From IMG/VR virus record IMGVR_UViG_3300050821_013430, positions 124,001 to 188,000 of that record: DNA of 64,000 nucleotides; one strand, written 5' to 3'. Below the pieces are notes generated by a model, which made no database searches, was not told where the DNA came from, and worked only from the letters and a program-made list of their open reading frames with translations. Shown here piece after piece: positions 33,388 to 60,505 of this stretch. How positions within the stretch are numbered: the first letter of the stretch is position 1; each line of letters opens with the position of its first letter. The translations under genes were made by a program, and so were the position numbers.

Positions 33388-33549
33388 CGATGTATGATAT
33401 ATCCCATACTTTTGAGTGGCAAGGGGTAAGGAAAACTAAGGATACGATTGTTGCACCTGTATGGTTCAATGTCGGGCACTAAGACGTTCATACGCTGGTA
33501 CTCGTAAATTACGGTATATTTGTTTCTACCTATTTTACAAATAAAAGTA

Positions 33550-34566
33550 TTATAGAAATGTATTTCCCTTGAACGGAATCCATTGCATCACCTTCGCTGA
33601 ACCGGAACTTCTTCCATTACCCATTTTAGTTTCTGCCCAAAGATTGGGGATACTTCCAAGAGGAACCTTAGTCTTACTTATTATCCATTTATTTGTCCAC
33701 GTATCTATATAATAATATGTCGTCGTCCCATCCGTTGGATTAAAATGCTGTCGTAAAAAAGTGCCCGAAGGAGGTGGAACCCCATCTTGATTTGTACTAT
33801 AATACAAACTTCCCTGCCGAGTTTTTTGTTCATCTTCTAAAAAGAAAGACATTCGATTGACCGTCACTGGCAAGGATGGATCCGGGGGCTGAGTAAAATC
33901 CTGATATACTACCATCGCTCTTGGGTCAAAGAGCGCGTCGTCCGTGCTGGAAGTCTCTGGTGGGGCTGGTGGGGTCAGCGGAGTGTATTGCGGCAGCGTT
34001 CCGATGCCTCGGCCCATCATACCTTCTGCGTCTTGATCCGAAAGTTGGATTGGAAATCTTTTGGCCGGAATACCGATAAAAGGATAATTTGATTGTGGGA
34101 TGGAGTTGCCATTAGCATCAAAGGCGGTATAATGAATCTTATGAGCCGGGTCATTGACATTGAAACCTGCGTCGCCGGGATTCTTGAATTTTTGTGGGGG
34201 GTGAAGCATAGCCTCAGGATCACCAAAAGGATATGGATCGATTAGTCCTTGCGTACCGTCTGCCTCGGCATTGGTACCTGCGTGCGGAAGACGAACATTA
34301 CCATCTACTTCGTCAGTTTCGTAAATAGTTGTGATAACGGGAGAGGTTTGCGTTCCGTCGGTAGCAAAGACATTGAAAGCAATTGATAAAGCTCCGAGAG
34401 GCAGTTGGATAGGCCCCGTATAAATAGGGGAAAAAAGAGTGGGAGTGCTTCCGTCGAGTGTATAGAATACGGTGCTCGGAATATTTGTAGTCAGAGTGAT
34501 AAACCGCGGAATCCCTGAAACCACTTCTTCCTTAGAAGCGATAATGCAAATACTTAAAACGGTCAT
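33550..34566 (-). CDS. Fn3-like/chitobiase C-terminal domain protein (possibly structural)
   Basis: TVFYTLDGSTPT..SPIYTGPI motif. Confidence 0.6.
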   Translation of the reverse strand: MTVLSICIIASKEEVVSGIPRFITLTTNIPSTVFYTLDGSTPTLFSPIYTGPIQLPLGALSIAFNVFATDGTQTSPVITTIYETDEVDGNVRLPHAGTNAEADGTQGLIDPYPFGDPEAMLHPPQKFKNPGDAGFNVNDPAHKIHYTAFDANGNSIPQSNYPFIGIPAKRFPIQLSDQDAEGMMGRGIGTLPQYTPLTPPAPPETSSTDDALFDPRAMVVYQDFTQPPDPSLPVTVNRMSFFLEDEQKTRQGSLYYSTNQDGVPPPSGTFLRQHFNPTDGTTTYYYIDTWTNKWIISKTKVPLGSIPNLWAETKMGNGRSSGSAKVMQWIPFKGNTFL

Positions 34567-50935: not shown

Positions 50936-51249
50936 TTTGTTCTAAGTTTTCCTAAAAGCGATCCGAAATCTTTGAGATCAATTTTGAGTTTAGGAAGCGC
51001 GGCGAGTTTATCGTTGATGTATTGTTCATAAGCAAAAGAATCACTATTACTCCTACGTTTGGCTAATTCTTCCATTGCTAACTTAGCAAGTTCAGCATAC
51101 ATTCCTAAATATCTTTGGGCGACAACAAGATCAGCTAATTTAGTATTAGGTAGTTCTGGTATGCGTTGAATAATTTCTTCTTCGGAAAGAGATTCTCCTT
51201 CGATCTCGTCGGGAAGAAATTCTGAAATATCATAAAGTCCTTTGATCAT
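50932..51249 (-). CDS. Hypothetical protein
   Basis: 105-aa ORF. Confidence 0.55.
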   Translation of the reverse strand: MIKGLYDISEFLPDEIEGESLSEEEIIQRIPELPNTKLADLVVAQRYLGMYAELAKLAMEELAKRRSNSDSFAYEQYINDKLAALPKLKIDLKDFGSLLGKLRTK

Positions 51250-51596
51250 CTTAGTCCCTCGACAGTTTTCATTTTTATTTTGACTCCCGTAGTTATCTCG
51301 CCTTTTCGATGATAAAACTCACTAAGTAAAGGACGTCTATAAAAGAATAGAATCATTTTCTGAAATAGTTTAGGAAAATATAACATCTTCCCCAAAATCA
51401 ATAATTCTCGTATTGTCTGAAAGGTATATTTGATTATTAGTGCTACGTCGCTTTTAGGAATCAATGGGTACCGGGCAGACACTCGGTCAACCAATTTATC
51501 AGTTTTCATTTTGATAGGATATTCTTGATCTAAAACACGCACTAATTCTTCTGCTGAAATATCTACAAAATCAAATTGTTGATGATATTTTTTCAT
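51246..51596 (-). CDS. Divergent HU/IHF-like protein
   Basis: LVDRVSARYPLIPKSDVALII...IRELLILGK resembles HU/IHF N-terminal helices. Confidence 0.5.
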   Translation of the reverse strand: MKKYHQQFDFVDISAEELVRVLDQEYPIKMKTDKLVDRVSARYPLIPKSDVALIIKYTFQTIRELLILGKMLYFPKLFQKMILFFYRRPLLSEFYHRKGEITTGVKIKMKTVEGLR

Positions 51597-51599
51597 TAT

Positions 51600-51950
51600 C
51601 TAATCAATTATATCAGTACTTTCCTTGATTTCCAATTCAACATTCTTTTTGATCATTCGTTGATAAAAATCACAATCCAATTTCTCTTCATCGGTCGCGC
51701 ATTCTAAATGCCAACCCCTACCATTTTGGCAAAAAATAAAATCTCCCGGCAAATAAACACGATTACATTTTTCACATTTACCACTAAATTTTGATGGAAG
51801 GTAAATGATTTTACCATCATTCCGAGGAGTACATTTTAGTTTGCCATCTCGGATCATTTTGGCGATCTCGACCGCCGCGCCCGGGCTACCGTTCTCGTTG
51901 AAACAGTCCAAATAATAATTGAAAGCGTTTTGAATTTTGTTGTTGATCAT
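51600..51950 (-). CDS. Hypothetical protein with Zn-binding motif
   Basis: SKFSGKCEKC...PGD.I...WHLEC. Confidence 0.55.
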   Translation of the reverse strand: MINNKIQNAFNYYLDCFNENGSPGAAVEIAKMIRDGKLKCTPRNDGKIIYLPSKFSGKCEKCNRVYLPGDFIFCQNGRGWHLECATDEEKLDCDFYQRMIKKNVELEIKESTDIID

Positions 51951-54108: not shown

Positions 54109-54485
54109 ACGACAAAAATACAACACTCAAACTTTTAGCCATTGTCAAAAAACAACAAGCGATGATTGAAAGACTAGCCAATTGGTCAGGGGCGGTTAGT
54201 CCTGCCTCGGTATTACAAGCAAATACTCCTAATAGTGCTGGCAGTATGGCTGGGGCACCAGAAAGCGCTAAACAGCGCATCCAAGCCATGATTATTCCAA
54301 TGAAGTTGGAAATTATTGATTTGGAATGGGGCACACTTCCAAAAATAGTACTGCAAGGCCAAAAAGTAGATTATCCAAGACCGCATGCTGATCAAGATTT
54401 GGTTGCTCGCTTGAAACCACGCCTTTCTACAATAATGGATGACTATCAAAAACACGGTATTGTGCTTAGCATTCAACTTGTTTAG
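54105..54485 (+). CDS. Hypothetical protein with N-terminal module shared with 52964
   Basis: MNDKNTTLKLLAIVKKQQAMIERLAN; AGGAG SD. Confidence 0.6.
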   Translation: MNDKNTTLKLLAIVKKQQAMIERLANWSGAVSPASVLQANTPNSAGSMAGAPESAKQRIQAMIIPMKLEIIDLEWGTLPKIVLQGQKVDYPRPHADQDLVARLKPRLSTIMDDYQKHGIVLSIQLV

Positions 54486-54510
54486 CTTCAAATTCGAACG
54501 GCATTTAATA

Positions 54511-55197
54511 ATGAAAGATGTTTGTACAATCTATATTATACAAAATAATTTCAATGATAAAGTTTATATTGGCCAAACTTGGCAACCCGTCAATAAGCGT
54601 TTCAATGCACATCTAAAAGATAAAAAAGGCTCCTGTCGTAAGTTATTCAATGCTTTCAATAAATACGATCGCGCGAATTTTTATATCGCGGTATTAGCGG
54701 TTTGCAATACACAATCAGAAGCAGATTGGCTGGAAACCTGCTGGATAGATATTTTCGATAGTCGTATAAATGGATACAATCTTAGAAGTGGCGGATCACG
54801 CGGCAAACATTCAGAAGAAAGCAAACAAAAGATGAGCACCGATCGAAAAGGCAAAATGCTTGGAGAAATACATCCAATGTATGGCAAGCATCATACCGAG
54901 GAAACTAAAGCCAGAATGTCAAAGTCCAAAAGAGGAAAGGTTCAATCCGAAAAAAGCAATCATAAAAGATCAGAAGCATTGAAGGGACGATCGATTCTTA
55001 CGGAAATTCAAGTTCAGCAAATCCGGGAAAGCCACATGCAAATGAAAAGTTATCGTACATTAGCTAAAGAATTTGATATATCTATAACTACAGTGGAACG
55101 CGTGGTAAAAAAGAAAAGTCCATATAATAAACCGCTTACTGATGAAGCAAGCATAGCAAGACAAAATAATAGCCAGTCTAAACTTTTTGGTACTTAG
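54511..55197 (+). CDS. GIY-YIG homing endonuclease with NUMOD3 repeats and HTH
   Basis: IYIIQNNFNDKVYIGQT, GYNL, HSEESK/HTEETK; start at MKDVCT. Paralogue of 14030-14866. Confidence 0.88.
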   Translation: MKDVCTIYIIQNNFNDKVYIGQTWQPVNKRFNAHLKDKKGSCRKLFNAFNKYDRANFYIAVLAVCNTQSEADWLETCWIDIFDSRINGYNLRSGGSRGKHSEESKQKMSTDRKGKMLGEIHPMYGKHHTEETKARMSKSKRGKVQSEKSNHKRSEALKGRSILTEIQVQQIRESHMQMKSYRTLAKEFDISITTVERVVKKKSPYNKPLTDEASIARQNNSQSKLFGT

Positions 55198-55720: not shown

Positions 55721-56185
55721 TCAAGAATGTGGCAAGATCAATTTTTCAACATCAATTCCAAAACTTTTCAACAAGGATACATCTAATGCCCAATGAAAGT
55801 GGCTGCGTTGGCTCCAAATCTGAAACTCGTGGTGAATATAATCCTTGGCCTCTTGTTCCGGTATCTCATTGACTTTCATTAGATGGTGTAGGGCGTCCTC
55901 ATATTTCCCGGCGGTCATCGCATAACCCATATGTTTAGTGAGATGGCAGGCGGGACATAAGGCCATCATGCATTTTAGTTTTTGGATATGTCGATGATCA
56001 TCATATGACCAAACTTCGTGGCAATGCAAGGCAACATTGGTAGTGCCGCAAACTTCGCAAGCGTTGTAGGCGTTGCTATAAATTTGCTTTCTAAGTATGT
56101 CCCATTGAGTTTGAGAAAGGATAGCACGAAGACTCTTGCCCCACGCATTTAAAGGGACGAGTTCAAGTATTAGGCGCATCGACAT
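55721..56185 (-). CDS. HNH endonuclease-like protein
   Basis: WDILRK...CEVC...LHCHEVW...LCPACH..KH; AGGAGG SD. Confidence 0.75.
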   Translation of the reverse strand: MSMRLILELVPLNAWGKSLRAILSQTQWDILRKQIYSNAYNACEVCGTTNVALHCHEVWSYDDHRHIQKLKCMMALCPACHLTKHMGYAMTAGKYEDALHHLMKVNEIPEQEAKDYIHHEFQIWSQRSHFHWALDVSLLKSFGIDVEKLILPHS

Positions 56186-56255: not shown

Positions 56256-56332
56256 TGGTGTCCCCGGCGAATTAACAGCTCGCATCATTTTCGTTTTAGG
56301 GACGAACGCTCTTGTTTTTGAGCTACGGGGAC
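56256..56332 (-). tRNA. Atypical tRNA with CUA anticodon (putative amber suppressor)
   Basis: GTCCCCG TA GCTC-AAAAACAA-GAGC G TTCGT-CCCTAAA-ACGAA AATGAT GCGAG-CTGTTAA-TTCGC CGGGGAC A CCA. Full cloverleaf with encoded CCA; anticodon CTA at 56297-56299; C33, no D-loop GG, no TTC. Confidence 0.75.
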
Positions 56333-56399: not shown

Positions 56400-56732
56400 T
56401 CATTTGATCCATTCATCTGGCACAATCGCGTGGGATTGACACCATTCATCGAGGTCTTGGTTTTCCATCCACATAAATACACCATAATCTTCACCACCAA
56501 AATACTCATCGATATGAATATCGATATCCTCTAATTTTGCTCCTTTGAGAAACTCAACAACGATATGGGCAGCCCAAATAGCATAGGCTTTGCGCCCATC
56601 TGTAAGTTTTTGGTAGAGGTTTTTAGCGACAGTATGTACATCGCCTAATAAATCTTCTGGATCGACAAACCATCCTTTGGATGTATAGAGATACTTGCCA
56701 GTTTTCCAATTATTGATTACATATTGGGCCAT
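56400..56732 (-). CDS. Hypothetical protein
   Basis: 110-aa ORF directly after the PTH2-like gene. Confidence 0.55.
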   Translation of the reverse strand: MAQYVINNWKTGKYLYTSKGWFVDPEDLLGDVHTVAKNLYQKLTDGRKAYAIWAAHIVVEFLKGAKLEDIDIHIDEYFGGEDYGVFMWMENQDLDEWCQSHAIVPDEWIK

Positions 56733-57068
56733 TTATTTTCCTTTCAATGCCAGTTTCAGATGTTGGCATAATCTTTTGCTTTTCTCACCGGGCGCCAATG
56801 CTATCGCAGTGAGTTCGTCTTCCAAATCCGGCTCTCGAAATAATGTTCGTTCGATGTTTTGTTCTCTGGCTTGTCGAGCAAGCTCCTGCAAGTCAAATTT
56901 ACTTTCAGTTCGCAACACCACAATATAGTTTGAGGTCGTTAGCCAATGCTTTGCACTCTCAGGATGTTCGATCATAAAAGTGGTAGCGGCGTGGCAGGCC
57001 TGAGCGATTTGTAGTCCTGGTGCGAGATCGCCCCGCACCACGATGTAGAGTTTATCAATCTATGACAT
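56733..57068 (-). CDS. PTH2-family (peptidyl-tRNA hydrolase II-like) protein with in-frame UAG at codon 3
   Basis: ATG TCA TAG ATT GAT AAA CTC TAC ATC GTG GTG CGG = MS*IDKLYIVVRGDL; then AQACHA, IVVL, FREPDL..ELTAIAL. The ATG overlaps the upstream TAA (TAATG). Confidence 0.8.
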
Positions 57069-57484
57069 TAGAGGCCCAGCACTTTCAATATCTTGCCAAA
57101 AACGGTATGGGCGATTTGGTTGGTGGCTGGCATGGCAGCAGGTTTAGCAGCGGGCAGTGATTCGTCTTGCAGCCAAGCCTTCACTCTTTCCAAAGTCCAG
57201 ACGCCGGGGACGTTATGGGCCTCGATGATTTGCAATATAAGCCCCGCTGAGGGCTTATTGTCGATCCGACATCTAGGCTCCAAGACCTTGTAGAAAACGC
57301 CTCTAAGGGCTGCGTAAGCGAGCAAATGATGTCTTGATTGACTTCCGACGGAACGCTTGATAGAGCAAAGCGACCAAGCCTTCTCATCCTTTTTGGCTTT
57401 TTTGATTTGGGATCGGAGTTGTTGAGACTTGTCCGAGAGTCCGTTGATTTTTGCTACTAAAAAATGTCTATAATATTTATTCAT
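57068..57484 (-). CDS. Hypothetical protein (RHHLLAYAALRG motif), first gated gene of the amber operon
   Basis: 138 aa; AAGGAG SD 7 nt upstream. Confidence 0.7.
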   Translation of the reverse strand: MNKYYRHFLVAKINGLSDKSQQLRSQIKKAKKDEKAWSLCSIKRSVGSQSRHHLLAYAALRGVFYKVLEPRCRIDNKPSAGLILQIIEAHNVPGVWTLERVKAWLQDESLPAAKPAAMPATNQIAHTVFGKILKVLGL

Positions 57485-57569
57485 TAAGTTTCTCCTTGTA
57501 AAATTGTTTGGTGAATTGGATTGAAAGAAGCCAATCCCAAGGAGGATCGCGCGAACGAATAGTAATCTA
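57477..57569 (-). promoter_or_regulatory. Putative amber-readthrough translational attenuator (UAG + RDPPW + anti-SD/SD stem)
   Basis: After the TAG the frame stays open as ITIRSRDPPWDWLLSIQFTKQFYKEKLNE-TAA. CTCCTTG (57544-57538) is complementary to the SD CAAGGAG (57498-57492). Inner hairpin GGATTG/CAATCC. Confidence 0.65.
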
Positions 57570-57764
57570 CGAATAGGTCATTAGTTCGGTTTCTGAAATT
57601 TCGGTCAAAAATTCTTCATTAGTGGTTTTGATTTTATAGGTAGGCACACCATTGATGAATACATTATCAAAACCTATAATAGTGGCAGCCACTTCGTAAT
57701 CACCAACCCAGGGATTGTATCTTTGGATTTTTACTCTTTGTCCAATTGAGAATTTAGCCTTCAT
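57567..57764 (-). CDS. Small KOW/SH3-like protein that also serves as the leader ORF ending MTYS-UAG
   Basis: KFSIGQRVKI...YKIK...ISETEL; GGATATA motif 9 nt upstream. Confidence 0.6.
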   Translation of the reverse strand: MKAKFSIGQRVKIQRYNPWVGDYEVAATIIGFDNVFINGVPTYKIKTTNEEFLTEISETELMTYS

Positions 57765-57781
57765 CTCTAACTATATATCCT

Positions 57782-58135
57782 TTATTTAGCAGCCAATTGT
57801 CGAAATACTTCGGTGGCCCACTCGTTCAATGCAGCCAAAATGAAATCCCAATCCGCTTCCGTCAAATCCTCATTGTTTTGCATTTTAGTATCTAACTGCA
57901 AAAGATAGAGCAGTTGATCGGTGAGATGATTGCTCTTCTCGTGCATATACTGCTCAAATAGGAAGAAAATTACCTTGCCGCTATCTTCCGAGCCGGGGTG
58001 GTAATTGATCGAGAAAAGTTCTTTGACCCAAGCCATATCCTCTTCGGAAGGTTTGACGCCCTCGTCGCGTAGGAAGCAGATGATGACGCTTAGCCGGGTG
58101 TAGCAGGAATGTAGATGTATGTTTTCAGGTGCCAT
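57782..58135 (-). CDS. Hypothetical protein
   Basis: Start at MAPENI (58135); the longer call overlaps the tmRNA 3' end. Confidence 0.55.
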   Translation of the reverse strand: MAPENIHLHSCYTRLSVIICFLRDEGVKPSEEDMAWVKELFSINYHPGSEDSGKVIFFLFEQYMHEKSNHLTDQLLYLLQLDTKMQNNEDLTEADWDFILAALNEWATEVFRQLAAK

Positions 58136-58154
58136 TGTCTTTCTCTGTAAATTT

Positions 58155-58506
58155 TGGAGCTGCCGAGCTTCGATGCCCGGGTCTCCCACACTCAATCCTA
58201 AAACTCATTCACAAACTTAGCAAGTGATATTAGCATTTGCACTAATCGAAGAGTTTTAGGTTCTTCGCGACCGATCTACTGTTGATTTCATTTGAGGCCC
58301 CGTAGCCAAACATCAAACTATTTTTCGTGGGTTAGCGTTCCTTTGACTACTAAAAATACCTCATCTCGGAACGTATGGGGCCCTTAGGCTGCCATAGCGA
58401 ATACTGTTTCGTCAGCGTTCAAACGTTGATCACTTTTTGACGAGGAGCAATCGTCCCCGGTTTGCGTTTTAGTTTCTCCTGCGAGATCGAAATCCAATTC
58501 AGCCCC
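58155..58506 (-). ncRNA. ssrA: tmRNA, tag (A)ADETVFAMAA
   Basis: 5' GGGGCTGAATTGGATTTCGA and 3' CAGCTCC-A give an acceptor stem with G3:U70. Tag frame GCT GAC GAA ACA GTA TTC GCT ATG GCA GCC TAA at 58416-58384. Length 352 nt; CCA not encoded. Confidence 0.92.
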
Positions 58507-59740: not shown

Positions 59741-60505
59741 TCAGTGTTTTTTGATGATATCTTGGAGAAATTCCTTTTCCGAAGTGAAAATCGGAACATC
59801 GGTATTTAGAGCCCAACGCTCTTTTACAATATCCTCGCCGTTGTAATTGATCGTCTCCGGGCGTCGGTAGCACACTACGCCTCTCCTAAATTCGACCGGA
59901 TACTCATAGAAATCAATTCCCGCTTCTTCTTTCAATAGTTTGATCTTCTCTTCCAAGGAAGTATCCATCAGCATCTCTTCGATTTCGTGTTTCCTATACT
60001 TCTTGATCAATTCATAGAAACAAGCCAGCCTAACTGCAATTTGGTGGGCTCGTTGCTGATGATATACCATAACATTTACTGCCTCAGTAAGATTAGGGAC
60101 GGTAAAAATCTTGCTCAAAAAGATGGGGTCGCCCGACAAATTTACTTCCAATTCTGCTGCAGCATCATTGAAATGGAGCGTGGCAAGAGAAGAAGCGGCA
60201 GAAATAATTTTGGAAACGGAATTATCATACCAAGGCTGAGTATCCAAAGTTTGATCGTTTCTTACAATTATTGTAATTTCATCGTTGAACGAATAAGCAA
60301 AAACTGCTCCCTCAATTTCTTGAACGAGATCGGCCATCGTGGCATAGAGGCATTGTCCAAGTTCCAAAGAAAATGGTTTTGGTAGCAAGGAAGTGATCTT
60401 GCTGAAATTTCTTCCGTTGAGATTGATGATCAGCGGCACTCGGGGCATCAGTCTCGGGTCGCAAATATCCTCATAACTTGTAATTCTGGCTTTCAGTGGC
60501 TGCAT
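59741..60505 (-). CDS. Thg1-like protein (tRNA-His guanylyltransferase / 3'-5' polymerase family)
   Basis: YE...P.II.LNGRNFS.T...KPF, YSFNDEI, SKIISAASS, FRRGV. Confidence 0.85.
   Translation of the reverse strand: MQPLKARITSYEDICDPRLMPRVPLIINLNGRNFSKITSLLPKPFSLELGQCLYATMADLVQEIEGAVFAYSFNDEITIIVRNDQTLDTQPWYDNSVSKIISAASSLATLHFNDAAAELEVNLSGDPIFLSKIFTVPNLTEAVNVMVYHQQRAHQIAVRLACFYELIKKYRKHEIEEMLMDTSLEEKIKLLKEEAGIDFYEYPVEFRRGVVCYRRPETINYNGEDIVKERWALNTDVPIFTSEKEFLQDIIKKH

What the first reader, a model, noticed from the sequence alone, without database searches (positions are those of the whole stretch)
56733..57068. PTH2-like gene whose conserved first beta-strand lies behind an amber at codon 3
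The ORF caller starts at GTG 57041, which truncates the family's N-terminal K-x-x-I-V-V-R-x-D-L strand (here KLYIVVRGDL) and has no clear SD. The natural start is ATG 57068, coupled to the upstream stop by TAATG, giving MS*IDKLYIVVRGDL. Full-length protein therefore needs UAG readthrough. The canonical GKxAAQ lysine is replaced (GLQIAQACHA), which is more like the PTRHD1/PTH2-like subgroup, so hydrolase activity is not guaranteed.
Basis: partly seen in the sequence, partly recalled or inferred. Interest (0 to 1): 0.75.

Follow-up and report, generated by a model that had tools for sequence, protein, structure and literature searches.

The report
Amber-gated phage hydrolase with own suppressor tRNA
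A jumbo phage's peptidyl-tRNA-hydrolase-like gene has a stop codon (UAG) as its third codon, and a previously undetected suppressor tRNA that can read UAG lies 400 bases downstream; many other phages keep the same gene-plus-tRNA pairing, which gives these puzzling phage suppressor tRNAs a concrete target.

Summary
On the minus strand the sequence reads ATG(57068)-TCA-TAG-ATT-GAT-AAA-CTC-TAC-ATC-GTG(57041). The ATG overlaps the stop of the upstream ORF (TAATG). The residues after the TAG (KLYIVVR) form strand beta-1 of a Pth2 fold.

The interpretation that the full protein needs UAG readthrough is supported. The means of readthrough appears to be encoded nearby. Window 56332-56256 (minus strand) is a 77-nt tRNA with anticodon CUA that ARAGORN and Rfam both missed. 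It folds as a perfect cloverleaf, has compensatory changes in a relative, and scores 46.6 bits (E 7e-11) against a model built from other phages' CUA tRNAs.

The phage otherwise uses the standard code. The gene is under strong purifying selection (dN/dS 0.075).

Of 69 distinct phage homologues, 33 have ATG, then 1-7 sense codons, then a stop that is always TAG, just before the conserved strand. Of these 33, 28 have a tRNA(CUA) gene in the flanks. Many homologues with an ordinary start also sit beside suppressor tRNAs.

A conserved unknown gene lies directly upstream, and a tmRNA gene lies 1.1 kb upstream.

Best reading: a suppressor-tRNA-gated PTH2-like gene that is part of a conserved translation module. 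What the enzyme does to or for the suppressor remains an inference. I found no published description of this arrangement.

The parts
56733..57068 (-). PTH2-family (PTRHD1-like) gene read from ATG 57068, with UAG as codon 3 and stop TAA at 56735-56733
   Evidence: Searches give the sequence. Pfam PF01981 scores 48.8 bits. The AF2 model has pLDDT 95. Foldseek TM is 0.77-0.82 to archaeal Pth2 and human Bit1. dN/dS against L003 is 0.075.
57066..57068 (-). ATG start codon overlapping the TAA stop (57070-57068) of the upstream ORF, which suggests translational coupling
   Evidence: Relatives have the same kind of overlap: TAATG in L003 and ATGA in L005 and L007.
57060..57062 (-). In-frame amber codon (TAG), codon 3
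   Evidence: It is conserved as TAG in all 33 distinct amber-type homologues and in huge phages LR756500/01/04 and LR745206.
57039..57041 (-). GTG chosen by ORF callers. It lies inside strand beta-1 (Val7).
   Evidence: Many amber-type homologues have no canonical start at this position.
56256..56332 (-). Amber-suppressor-type tRNA gene (anticodon CUA at 56299-56297) with non-canonical features: C33, a D loop without GG, a T loop CUGUUAA, and 3' ACCA encoded and followed by a T run
   Evidence: The MFE structure is a perfect cloverleaf, -25.3 kcal/mol, z -4.0. Consensus folding with relatives gives 16 of 21 pairs with compensatory changes. It is the only perfect cloverleaf in the 472-kb genome. 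Model R1, built from other phages' CUA tRNAs, scores 46.6 bits, E 7e-11. ARAGORN and Rfam both missed it.
56400..56732 (-). 110-aa ORF between the PTH2-like gene and the tRNA; function unknown. It is specific to this lineage; in relatives L005 and L007 the tRNA follows the PTH2-like gene directly.
   Evidence: dN/dS against L003 is 0.054. No Pfam or PHROG match.
57068..57484 (-). 138-aa helical protein of a conserved family that lies directly upstream of PTH2-like genes in 32 loci; function unknown
   Evidence: BLAST clustering of neighbouring ORFs and alignment A3. The AF2 model has pLDDT 86 and a long helical hairpin. No Pfam, PHROG, PDB or fold match.
58152..58506 (-). tmRNA gene (tag reading frame approximately ADETVFAMAA, stop UAA)
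   Evidence: Rfam RF00023, 71 bits against a gathering score of 47, full model length. A tmRNA is also upstream of the PTH2-like gene in L003 and L050.
59741..60505 (-). Thg1-like tRNA-His guanylyltransferase (tRNA 5'-end maturation or repair) in the same gene cluster
   Evidence: Pfam PF04446, E 1.8e-18. Thg1 is also found near the gene in L003 and L005.

Best explanation
The gene starts at ATG 57068, which is translationally coupled to the upstream conserved 138-aa ORF. Its third codon is UAG. The full-length PTH2-like protein, with an intact beta-1 strand, is made only when that UAG is decoded. The decoder is most likely the phage's own tRNA(CUA), encoded 400 nt downstream on the same strand (56332-56256).

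Without suppression, RF1 ends translation after Met-Ser. Production of the enzyme is therefore gated by, and roughly proportional to, suppressor-tRNA activity relative to RF1.

The gene, the suppressor tRNA, the conserved upstream gene and (in some lineages) a tmRNA form a conserved phage translation module.

Shown here: the sequence anatomy, the fold, purifying selection, the standard code of the genome, the tRNA gene, and the conservation of both the early TAG and the tRNA linkage.

Inferred: that the tRNA is charged and decodes this UAG, and what the enzyme then does. My preferred reading of the function is that it hydrolyses ester-linked products connected with suppression. These would be either peptidyl-tRNAs that drop off after readthrough or the suppressor's own acylated forms. 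The amber codon would then act as a sensor tying enzyme level to suppression level.
For: (1) Anatomy.

(2) The stretch after the TAG is coding. KLY(I/V) is kept through synonymous changes in L003, L005 and L007. It is beta-1 of a confident Pth2-fold model.

(3) Of 69 distinct homologues, 33 have ATG, 1-7 sense codons, then a stop just before that strand. The stop is TAG in all 33, never TAA or TGA. Normal-start homologues have TGA, TAA and TAG as the first upstream in-frame stop in comparable numbers. The label needs at least 6 changes on the tree and spans deep branches.

(4) SD-like motifs sit 4-8 nt before the ATG in many of these, for example AAGGAG in L007, L050 and LR756501.

(5) The TAG aligns with a sense position of normal-start homologues (MS*IKEGDKLY against MATIKMGDKLY).

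(6) Window tRNA(CUA).

(7) Linkage: 28 of the 33 amber-type loci carry a tRNA(CUA) in the flanks, often 2-100 nt after the gene. Overall, 49 of 69 loci carry a suppressor-type tRNA, and in 35 it is the only tRNA nearby.

(8) The genome uses the standard code. 93 of 492 long ORFs end in TAG, coding density is 0.88-0.95 under table 11 and does not improve with TAG read as sense. The ATG-x-TAG motif is not general in the genome.

(9) dN/dS is 0.075 at dS 0.90, with the TAG retained.

(10) In the 735-kb phage LR756501 the gene has two in-frame TAGs while four neighbouring ORFs have none.
Against: There is no direct evidence of translation, of aminoacylation of the tRNA, or of which residue is inserted.

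The window tRNA is unusual. It has C33 instead of the near-universal U33 and non-canonical D and T loops. It fails both ARAGORN and the Rfam tRNA model, so it could decode poorly or have another role.

In this lineage two GTG codons follow the TAG and could give an N-truncated protein.

Five amber-type loci and three huge-phage loci show no CUA tRNA within the fetched flanks.

The catalytic Lys of Pth2 is absent, so hydrolase activity is not assured.

The suppressor must coexist with about 16-19% of phage genes ending in TAG. Backup stops after TAG are no closer than after TGA.
Confidence: 0.72

Rival explanations
1. The ATG-TCA-TAG is a two-codon upstream mini-ORF (start, one sense codon, stop). 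It only delivers ribosomes by coupling. The enzyme is initiated after the stop, at GTG 57041/57038 or at the non-canonical ATT 57059, by reinitiation. The neighbouring tRNA(CUA) has nothing to do with this codon.
For: GTG GTG follow within 6-7 codons in the window, L003 and L005. The codon after the TAG is most often ATT, ATA, GTT or GTA, which are near-cognate starts. Gene callers pick the GTG.
Against: At least 15 distinct lineages have no ATG/GTG/TTG between the TAG and the invariant Arg. The codon after the TAG can be AAC, GGT, GGA or CTT. The I/V after the TAG is a conserved family residue in normal-start homologues, which explains the ATT/GTT preference. A reinitiation device would work with TAA or TGA, yet all 33 cases are TAG. 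A GTG start removes four of the seven residues of beta-1. The co-location with CUA tRNAs would be left unexplained.
Confidence: 0.12
2. UAG is read through at a low level by host near-cognate tRNAs, or when RF1 is limiting, without any need for the phage tRNA-like element. That element is non-functional in decoding or serves another purpose. The early amber would then simply throttle expression or sense RF1 activity.
For: The window tRNA has C33 and non-canonical elbow loops and fails the standard tRNA detectors. The base after the TAG is A or G in nearly all cases. From my recollection of classical E. coli context studies, not tested here, that context favours readthrough. Some amber-type loci show no CUA tRNA nearby.
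Against: The tRNA is conserved with compensatory changes between the window and L003. It is homologous to L005's tRNA(CUA), which passes the Rfam threshold. 28 of 33 amber-type loci carry such a tRNA. That degree of linkage is hard to explain if the tRNA were irrelevant.
Confidence: 0.1
3. The phage reassigns TAG to an amino acid throughout its genes (genetic code 15, as in crAss-like and Lak phages), so the in-frame TAG is unremarkable.
For: A suppressor tRNA is present. Recoded phages are known (PMC9523058, PMC10879173).
Against: 93 of 492 long ORFs end in TAG. Table 11 gives 0.88-0.95 coding density in and around the window, and reading TAG as sense does not raise it. ORFs of up to 1931 aa have no TAG. 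Lak-A1, a phage reported to be TAG-recoded, has no early TAG in its homologue. In amber-type genes the TAG sits at one special position rather than being scattered through the gene.
Confidence: 0.03
4. The gene is a decaying pseudogene that acquired a nonsense mutation.
For: There is an in-frame stop at codon 3.
Against: dN/dS is 0.075 at dS 0.90 with the TAG kept. The same TAG is present in dozens of deeply divergent lineages. There are no other stops or frameshifts.
Confidence: 0.02

Closest known systems
Archaeal/eukaryotic peptidyl-tRNA hydrolase Pth2 (PF01981; e.g. PDB 2zv3, 3erj, 1wn2, human Bit1 1q7s) and PTRHD1
   Same: Same fold (TM 0.77-0.82). The Pfam match is above the cut-off. The R-x-D-L ... 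Q..HA and T-A-I-A motifs are shared. The presence of PTH2 in jumbo phages has already been noted (PMC7824862).
   Different: The 'GMGKGK' loop is shortened to 'PG' and the Lys aligns with Leu16. The 'DAG' motif is replaced by E76-P77-D78. Sequence identity is highest to PTRHD1 (30-32%). Activity is untested. No cellular Pth2 is known to me (from recollection) to carry an early in-frame stop.
Stop-codon recoding in phages with suppressor tRNAs (genetic code 15; crAss-like and Lak phages)
   Same: A phage-encoded tRNA(CUA) allows translation of phage genes that contain in-frame TAG, and gene expression is gated by the suppressor (PMC10879173, PMC9523058).
   Different: Here the genome otherwise uses the standard code. 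TAG is a normal stop for 16-19% of genes. The gated gene is a single specific family, with the TAG at a fixed place (2-8 codons after the ATG) and physically linked to the tRNA gene.
Orphan suppressor tRNAs of standard-code jumbo phages (e.g. Xanthomonas phage XacN1; Agrobacterium phage Atu_ph07)
   Same: These are standard-code jumbo phages that carry CUA or UCA suppressor tRNAs together with tRNA-processing genes and peptidyl-tRNA hydrolases (PMC5852040, PMC6102473).
   Different: [quoted passage not shown] Here a target is seen at the 5' end of a gene. The XacN1 homologue I checked (ORF364) is a fusion protein without an early TAG, so the XacN1 case itself is not resolved.
Autoregulatory recoding of translation-factor genes: prfB (RF2) +1 frameshift at an in-frame UGA; ArfA control by tmRNA (from established knowledge)
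   Same: In each case a translation quality-control or termination factor depends for its own synthesis on how an in-frame stop or non-stop event is resolved, so the gene senses the activity it relates to.
   Different: This is readthrough by a dedicated tRNA rather than a frameshift. The sensed quantity would be suppressor tRNA against RF1. A feedback loop is only inferred here.
Lambda bar minigenes (two-codon ORFs AUG-AUA-stop whose expression is toxic when Pth is limiting; from established knowledge)
   Same: Without suppression, ATG-TCA-TAG is a two-codon mini-ORF. It is physically tied to a peptidyl-tRNA hydrolase function.
   Different: Here the mini-ORF is in frame with, and continuous with, the hydrolase gene. 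Only TAG is used. No toxicity or drop-off has been shown.

Membership tests
PTH2 (Pfam PF01981) | Sequence match to the family profile above the curated cut-off | tested here: met
   48.8 bits against a cut-off of 23, profile positions 2-114 of 115. A profile of the family hits PDB Pth2 chains, 2zv3 at E 2.9e-10.
PTH2 (Pfam PF01981) | Pth2 alpha/beta fold | tested here: met
   The AF2 model has pLDDT 95. Foldseek matches 2zv3, 3erj, 1wn2, 1q7s and 1xty with TM 0.77-0.82, probability 1.00.
PTH2 (Pfam PF01981) | Conserved Lys of the G-K motif in the loop after beta-1 (reported as catalytic in archaeal Pth2; from recollection) | tested here: not met
   The HMM alignment to 2zv3 puts Leu16 at that Lys, and the loop is two residues shorter. 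The position is L/M/Y/S/A/V across the phage subfamily.
PTH2 (Pfam PF01981) | Acidic residue of the D-A-G-x-T motif | tested here: inconclusive
   It is replaced by E76-P77-D78. E76 and D78 are invariant and P77 is nearly invariant in the subfamily, and T84 is kept. An acid is present but the local geometry differs.
PTH2 (Pfam PF01981) | Hydrolysis of peptidyl-tRNA | not testable with these tools
   Needs an enzyme assay or complementation of a pth(ts) strain.
Amber suppressor tRNA | Cloverleaf with 7/4/5/5-bp stems and a 7-nt anticodon loop carrying CUA at positions 34-36 | tested here: met
   The MFE structure is this cloverleaf. A custom scan finds it as the only perfect one in the genome. 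The consensus structure has 16 of 21 pairs with compensatory changes.
Amber suppressor tRNA | Recognition by general tRNA models (Rfam RF00005, ARAGORN) | tested here: not met
   ARAGORN finds nothing in the window. Rfam gives no match at E up to 1. A model built from 31 other phage CUA tRNAs does match: 46.6 bits, E 7e-11.
Amber suppressor tRNA | U33, G18-G19 and the T-Psi-C loop | tested here: not met
   The loop reads CC-CUA-AA (C33). The D loop is AAAAACAA and the T loop is CUGUUAA. L003 has the same features, and L005 also has a non-canonical T loop.
Amber suppressor tRNA | Aminoacylation and decoding of UAG | not testable with these tools
   Needs acid-gel northern blots or tRNA-seq and a readthrough reporter.
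Stop-codon-reassigned phage (genetic code 15) | Many genes carry in-frame TAG, and coding density rises when TAG is read as sense | tested here: not met
   The early ATG-x-TAG motif occurs at chance level elsewhere in the genome.
tmRNA (Rfam RF00023) | Match above the gathering score over the full model, with a tag reading frame | tested here: met
   71 bits against 47, model positions 1-374. The tag ends ...AMAA followed by UAA.

The most novel reading that the evidence does not exclude
The PTH2-like enzyme, the suppressor tRNA and the conserved upstream protein form a self-contained, self-regulating circuit found widely in large phages. The enzyme can only be made when the suppressor decodes its early UAG. 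The enzyme in turn acts on the suppressor's acylated or peptidyl forms, or on the peptidyl-tRNA and stalled-ribosome by-products of readthrough, alongside the phage tmRNA. The phage would thereby set and tolerate a controlled level of nonsense suppression in a standard-code host. This would give a function and a target to the 'orphan' suppressor tRNAs of standard-code phages.
Probability: 0.25. Interest if true: 0.9.

Novelty: new variant of a known kind. Interest (0 to 1): 0.8.

Why it matters
Suppressor tRNAs are common in large phages that otherwise use the standard code, and their targets have been an open question. The authors of the XacN1 paper state that they could not find any (PMC5852040).

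This locus shows a conserved, position-specific UAG at the very start of one gene family, and that family is physically linked to those tRNAs. The question therefore becomes directly testable with a reporter, a tRNA plasmid and an enzyme assay.

There are practical consequences for annotation. Gene callers systematically truncate these genes, and tRNA finders can miss the non-canonical suppressor.

If the enzyme acts on the suppressor or on the products of readthrough, this would be a natural circuit for controlling stop-codon readthrough. That would interest work on recoding and on genetic-code expansion.

Tried and rejected
1. Non-canonical ATT start at 57059. Rejected as the general answer, because other lineages have AAC, GGT, GGA or CTT after the TAG, and the I/V is a family residue.

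2. Genome-wide TAG reassignment. Rejected.

3. ATG-x-stop as a general start-region motif of this genome. Rejected: it occurs at chance level for all three stop codons.

4. A canonical suppressor tRNA in the genome found by ARAGORN or Rfam. None was found. A permissive ARAGORN run gave hundreds of meaningless calls. The odd tRNA-like element at genome 359398-359481 is not a CUA tRNA.

5. Other readthrough targets. TAG-terminated genes show no excess of long open extensions and no closer backup stops. An apparent homology running through stops upstream (window 58063-57557) is only nucleotide conservation seen in all frames.

6. Scan of metagenome contigs with alignment A1.

7. Function of the 138-aa upstream protein. 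No Pfam, PHROG, PDB-sequence, Foldseek-PDB or convincing AFDB match. The best was a 'transposase'-named cluster at TM 0.53-0.56, E 0.014, and the Atlas hits were weak.

8. Complex prediction of the 138-aa protein with the PTH2-like protein. No answer (score 0.00); this is evidence neither for nor against binding.

9. XacN1. Its homologue ORF364 is a fusion without an early TAG. I did not locate ORF295, the gene annotated as peptidyl-tRNA hydrolase.

10. Literature. Nine searches found PTH2 in jumbo phages and suppressor tRNAs in phages, but nothing on an early amber codon in PTH2 or on a PTH2-suppressor linkage. The searchable library is incomplete, so prior description cannot be excluded.

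Full report
**Origin of the window**

The window is bases 124001-188000 of a 472,749-bp virus record, a jumbo phage rated 100% complete by CheckV. The sequence is found in soil metagenomes. Genes are densely packed on the minus strand.

**The observation**

On the minus strand the 138-aa upstream ORF ends in TAA at 57070-57068. The last A of that stop is the first base of ATG 57068-57066. The sequence then reads TCA, TAG (57062-57060), ATT GAT AAA CTC TAC ATC, GTG (57041-57039), GTG CGG, and stays open to TAA 56735-56733.

Read from just after the TAG, the protein matches Pfam PTH2 over profile positions 2-114 of 115 (48.8 bits, cut-off 23). Read from the GTG it matches only positions 7-114.

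An AlphaFold model built on an alignment of 15 homologues has pLDDT 95. It places strand beta-1 at residues 3-9, KLYIVVR. Its best structural matches are archaeal Pth2 and human Bit1, with TM 0.77-0.82. Among Swiss-Prot models PTRHD1 gives the highest identity, 30-32%.

This includes the missing lysine: in a profile alignment to Pth2 structure 2zv3 the 'GMGKGK' loop is shortened to 'PG' and the Lys aligns with Leu16. The 'DAG' motif becomes E76-P77-D78.

**Is the TAG real and selected?**

The same ATG-TCN-TAG is present in a second IMG/VR contig. It is also present in an 84%-identical relative assembled independently in ENA and Logan (L003/L004; TCA is TCG there), and in a relative in a third soil run.

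Between the window and L003, dS is 0.90 and dN/dS is 0.075, and the TAG is retained. The gene is therefore functional and not decaying.

**Is the genome recoded?**

It is not. Of 492 non-overlapping ORFs of at least 100 aa, 93 end in TAG. Table 11 gives 0.88-0.95 coverage in and around the window. Reading TAG as sense does not raise that figure. The motif 'ATG, 1-4 codons, stop, then an ORF' occurs at chance level for all three stops elsewhere in the genome.

**Relatives**

The first surprise was that gene callers also truncate the relatives P0002, P0003, P0004, P0009, P0011 and P0012 at 'VVR' or 'MVR'. Their DNA shows why:
- L005 (55% identity): ATG ACA TAG GTT TCC AAG TTA TAT GTT GTG
- L007 (49% identity): AAGGAGaaacaATG ACA TAG GTA AAT GAT AAG CTC TAT ATT GTG
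- L008-L011: ATG TGC TCG TAG AAC GAT AAA CTT TAT ATT
- L012: ATG CTT TAG GGT GAC AAA TTG TAT

A scan of IMG/VR with the family alignment returned 80 of 211 relatives. I walked upstream in frame from the invariant Arg. After removing duplicates there are 69 distinct genes. They fall into two types:
- 33 are 'amber-type'. They have an ATG, then 1-7 sense codons, then a stop, then the conserved strand, with no ordinary start in a position to include that strand. In all 33 the stop is TAG.
- The other 36 have ordinary starts upstream of the strand, for example MATIKMGDKLY. Their first upstream in-frame stop is TGA, TAA or TAG in comparable numbers.

The TAG aligns with a sense position: MS*IKEGDKLY against MATIKMGDKLY. 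The I/V that so often follows the TAG is a family residue, which removes the argument for an ATT start. At least 15 lineages have no ATG/GTG/TTG at all between the TAG and the invariant Arg. Many have an SD-like motif 4-8 nt before the ATG.

On a maximum-likelihood tree the amber label needs at least six changes and covers deep branches.

Four of the huge phage genomes in GenBank are also amber-type: LR756500, LR756501 (735 kb), LR756504 and LR745206. In LR756501 the gene has a second in-frame TAG, while four neighbouring ORFs have none.

**The suppressor tRNA**

I checked tRNAs in five amber-type phage records. An anticodon-CUA tRNA lay right beside the gene in three of them.

Running ARAGORN over all fetched loci showed that this is the rule:
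- 28 of 33 amber-type loci have a tRNA(CUA) in the flanks. It is often 2-100 nt after the stop on the same strand, for example L005 at +8 and L007 at +2.
- 12 normal-type loci also have a tRNA(CUA).
- 8 have tRNAs with irregular anticodon loops containing UCA.
- 2 have UUA.
- In 35 of the 69 loci the suppressor-type tRNA is the only tRNA nearby.

For comparison, whole phage genomes with 22-62 tRNAs have only one or two suppressors. These tRNAs pass the Rfam tRNA gathering score.

In cluster C mycobacteriophages the gene has a normal GTG start with a proper SD, directly after an in-frame TAG. The neighbouring CUA tRNA is annotated as Ser in Myrna and Arg in Catera.

**The window's own tRNA**

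ARAGORN and Rfam report no tRNA in the window. However, a translated comparison with L005 lined up L005's tRNA(CUA) with window 56338-56288.

Window 56332-56256 (minus strand) reads as follows:
- acceptor stem GUCCCCG/CGGGGAC
- D stem GCUC/GAGC with loop AAAAACAA
- anticodon stem UUCGU/ACGAA with loop CC-CUA-AA
- T stem GCGAG/UUCGC with loop CUGUUAA
- then ACCA and a T run

Four lines of evidence support it as a tRNA gene:
- The minimum-free-energy fold is exactly this cloverleaf (-25.3 kcal/mol, z -4.0).
- The L003 copy has compensatory changes in the anticodon stem (UCUUU/AAAGA). In a six-sequence consensus, 16 of 21 pairs show double changes.
- A strict cloverleaf scan of both strands of the whole genome, for any anticodon, finds only this element. 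Shuffled genomes give 0-1 hits.
- A covariance model built from 31 CUA tRNAs of other phages, with this lineage excluded, finds it at 46.6 bits, E 7e-11. It is the only significant hit in the window.

In this lineage a 110-aa ORF has come to lie between the gene and the tRNA.

The tRNA is atypical. It has C33 and lacks the G18-G19 and T-Psi-C loop motifs, so its decoding efficiency is an open question.

**Other members of the neighbourhood**

The 138-aa ORF whose stop overlaps the ATG belongs to a family found directly upstream of the PTH2-like gene in 32 loci of both types. Its model is a long helical hairpin plus small helices (pLDDT 86). It has no informative sequence or fold match.

A tmRNA gene lies 1.1 kb upstream on the same strand (71 bits). 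A tmRNA is also upstream of the gene in L003 and in the distant L050. A Thg1-like gene lies further upstream.

Consensus scans suggest a promoter-like site before the tmRNA, and the T run after the tRNA could act as a terminator. These are pattern matches only.

**How it most likely works**

Shown:
- The gene's conserved N-terminus lies behind a UAG that selection keeps as UAG.
- Ribosome loading is at the upstream ATG, by coupling or by an SD.
- A cognate suppressor tRNA gene is linked to the gene in this phage and across the family.

Inferred:
- The tRNA is charged and decodes the UAG, so that enzyme output follows suppressor activity relative to RF1.

The linkage to suppressor tRNAs persists in homologues that have no early stop. 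The functional tie is therefore probably deeper than gating. The enzyme probably acts either on the suppressor's acylated or peptidyl forms (negative feedback) or on the by-products of readthrough (rescue). The nearby tmRNA fits the second idea. I cannot decide between these two.

**Rival explanations**

The rivals considered are downstream initiation, readthrough independent of the phage tRNA, general recoding, and a pseudogene. They are weighed in their own sections of this report.

**Novelty**

PTH2 in jumbo phages is known (PMC7824862). Suppressor tRNAs and TAG recoding in phages are also known (PMC10879173, PMC9523058). Orphan suppressors in standard-code phages have been reported without targets (PMC5852040, PMC6102473).

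I found no description of the early amber codon in PTH2-like genes or of the PTH2-suppressor linkage.

I rate this a new variant of a known kind: suppressor-gated phage gene expression, here as a dedicated gene-tRNA cassette in a standard-code genome.

Noticed in passing
window 58152-58506 (-): A full-length tmRNA gene (Rfam 71 bits) that the ARAGORN-based tool did not report. The mechanical ORF 57782-58195 overlaps its 3' end.
   Followed up: partly
genome G000 bases about 250000-425000 (outside the window): A 175-kb block with GC 0.47-0.56, against 0.38-0.40 elsewhere. Long-ORF coverage under table 11 is only 0.63-0.75 and rises most (to 0.80-0.90) if TGA is read as sense. All canonical tRNAs of the genome lie in this block. 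It could be many small genes, a different code block or a chimeric assembly.
   Followed up: no
genome G000 359398-359481 (-): A tRNA-like element (Rfam tRNA 39.7 bits) with an enlarged anticodon region. ARAGORN reads it as tRNA-Ser(CGA) with a 10-nt insertion.
   Followed up: partly
window 51246-51950 (-): Two adjacent 116-aa ORFs in the same frame, separated only by TAG plus one codon before the next ATG. This is a possible readthrough fusion now that a suppressor tRNA is known.
   Followed up: no
window 57567-57764 (-): A 65-aa ORF in the same cluster ends in TAG, and the frame stays open for 29 more codons through otherwise unassigned sequence up to the start of the 138-aa ORF.
   Followed up: no
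window 54439-55197 (+) and 55721-56185 (-): A GIY-YIG/NUMOD3 homing endonuclease and an HNH endonuclease (phrog_5200) flank the module. Relatives have GIY-YIG genes nearby too.
   Followed up: no
L126 (Myrna 33522-33593) and L127 (Catera 91379-91450): In cluster C mycobacteriophage records the tRNA next to the PTH2-like gene is annotated tRNA-Ser or tRNA-Arg. For Myrna (IMG/VR copy L021) ARAGORN reads a 72-nt tRNA with anticodon CUA at the annotated position. For Catera I read the CUA in Bxz1-like IMG/VR relatives (L081/L083) at the matching position, not in Catera's own record. The gene's GTG start directly follows an in-frame TAG, itself preceded by ATG or GTG.
   Followed up: partly
L024, L025, L030, L040, L041, L068, L071, L074; L018:1218-1456: Normal-start PTH2-like genes of high-GC phages sit beside tRNAs with irregular 6- or 8-nt anticodon loops containing UCA, UUCA or UCUA. 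L018 has a cluster of three odd tRNAs, one containing UUUA. These may be opal, ochre or quadruplet-type suppressors.
   Followed up: partly
L129 (LR756501.1 686665-689973): In the 735-kb phage the PTH2-like gene carries two in-frame TAGs (codon 3 and about 34 codons later), while four neighbouring ORFs of at least 120 aa carry none.
   Followed up: partly
L094 (Xoo-sp13), L128 (XacN1 ORF364) and Rak2-like phages: A separate subfamily has the PTH2-like domain at the C-terminus of an approximately 280-aa protein annotated as hypothetical.
   Followed up: no
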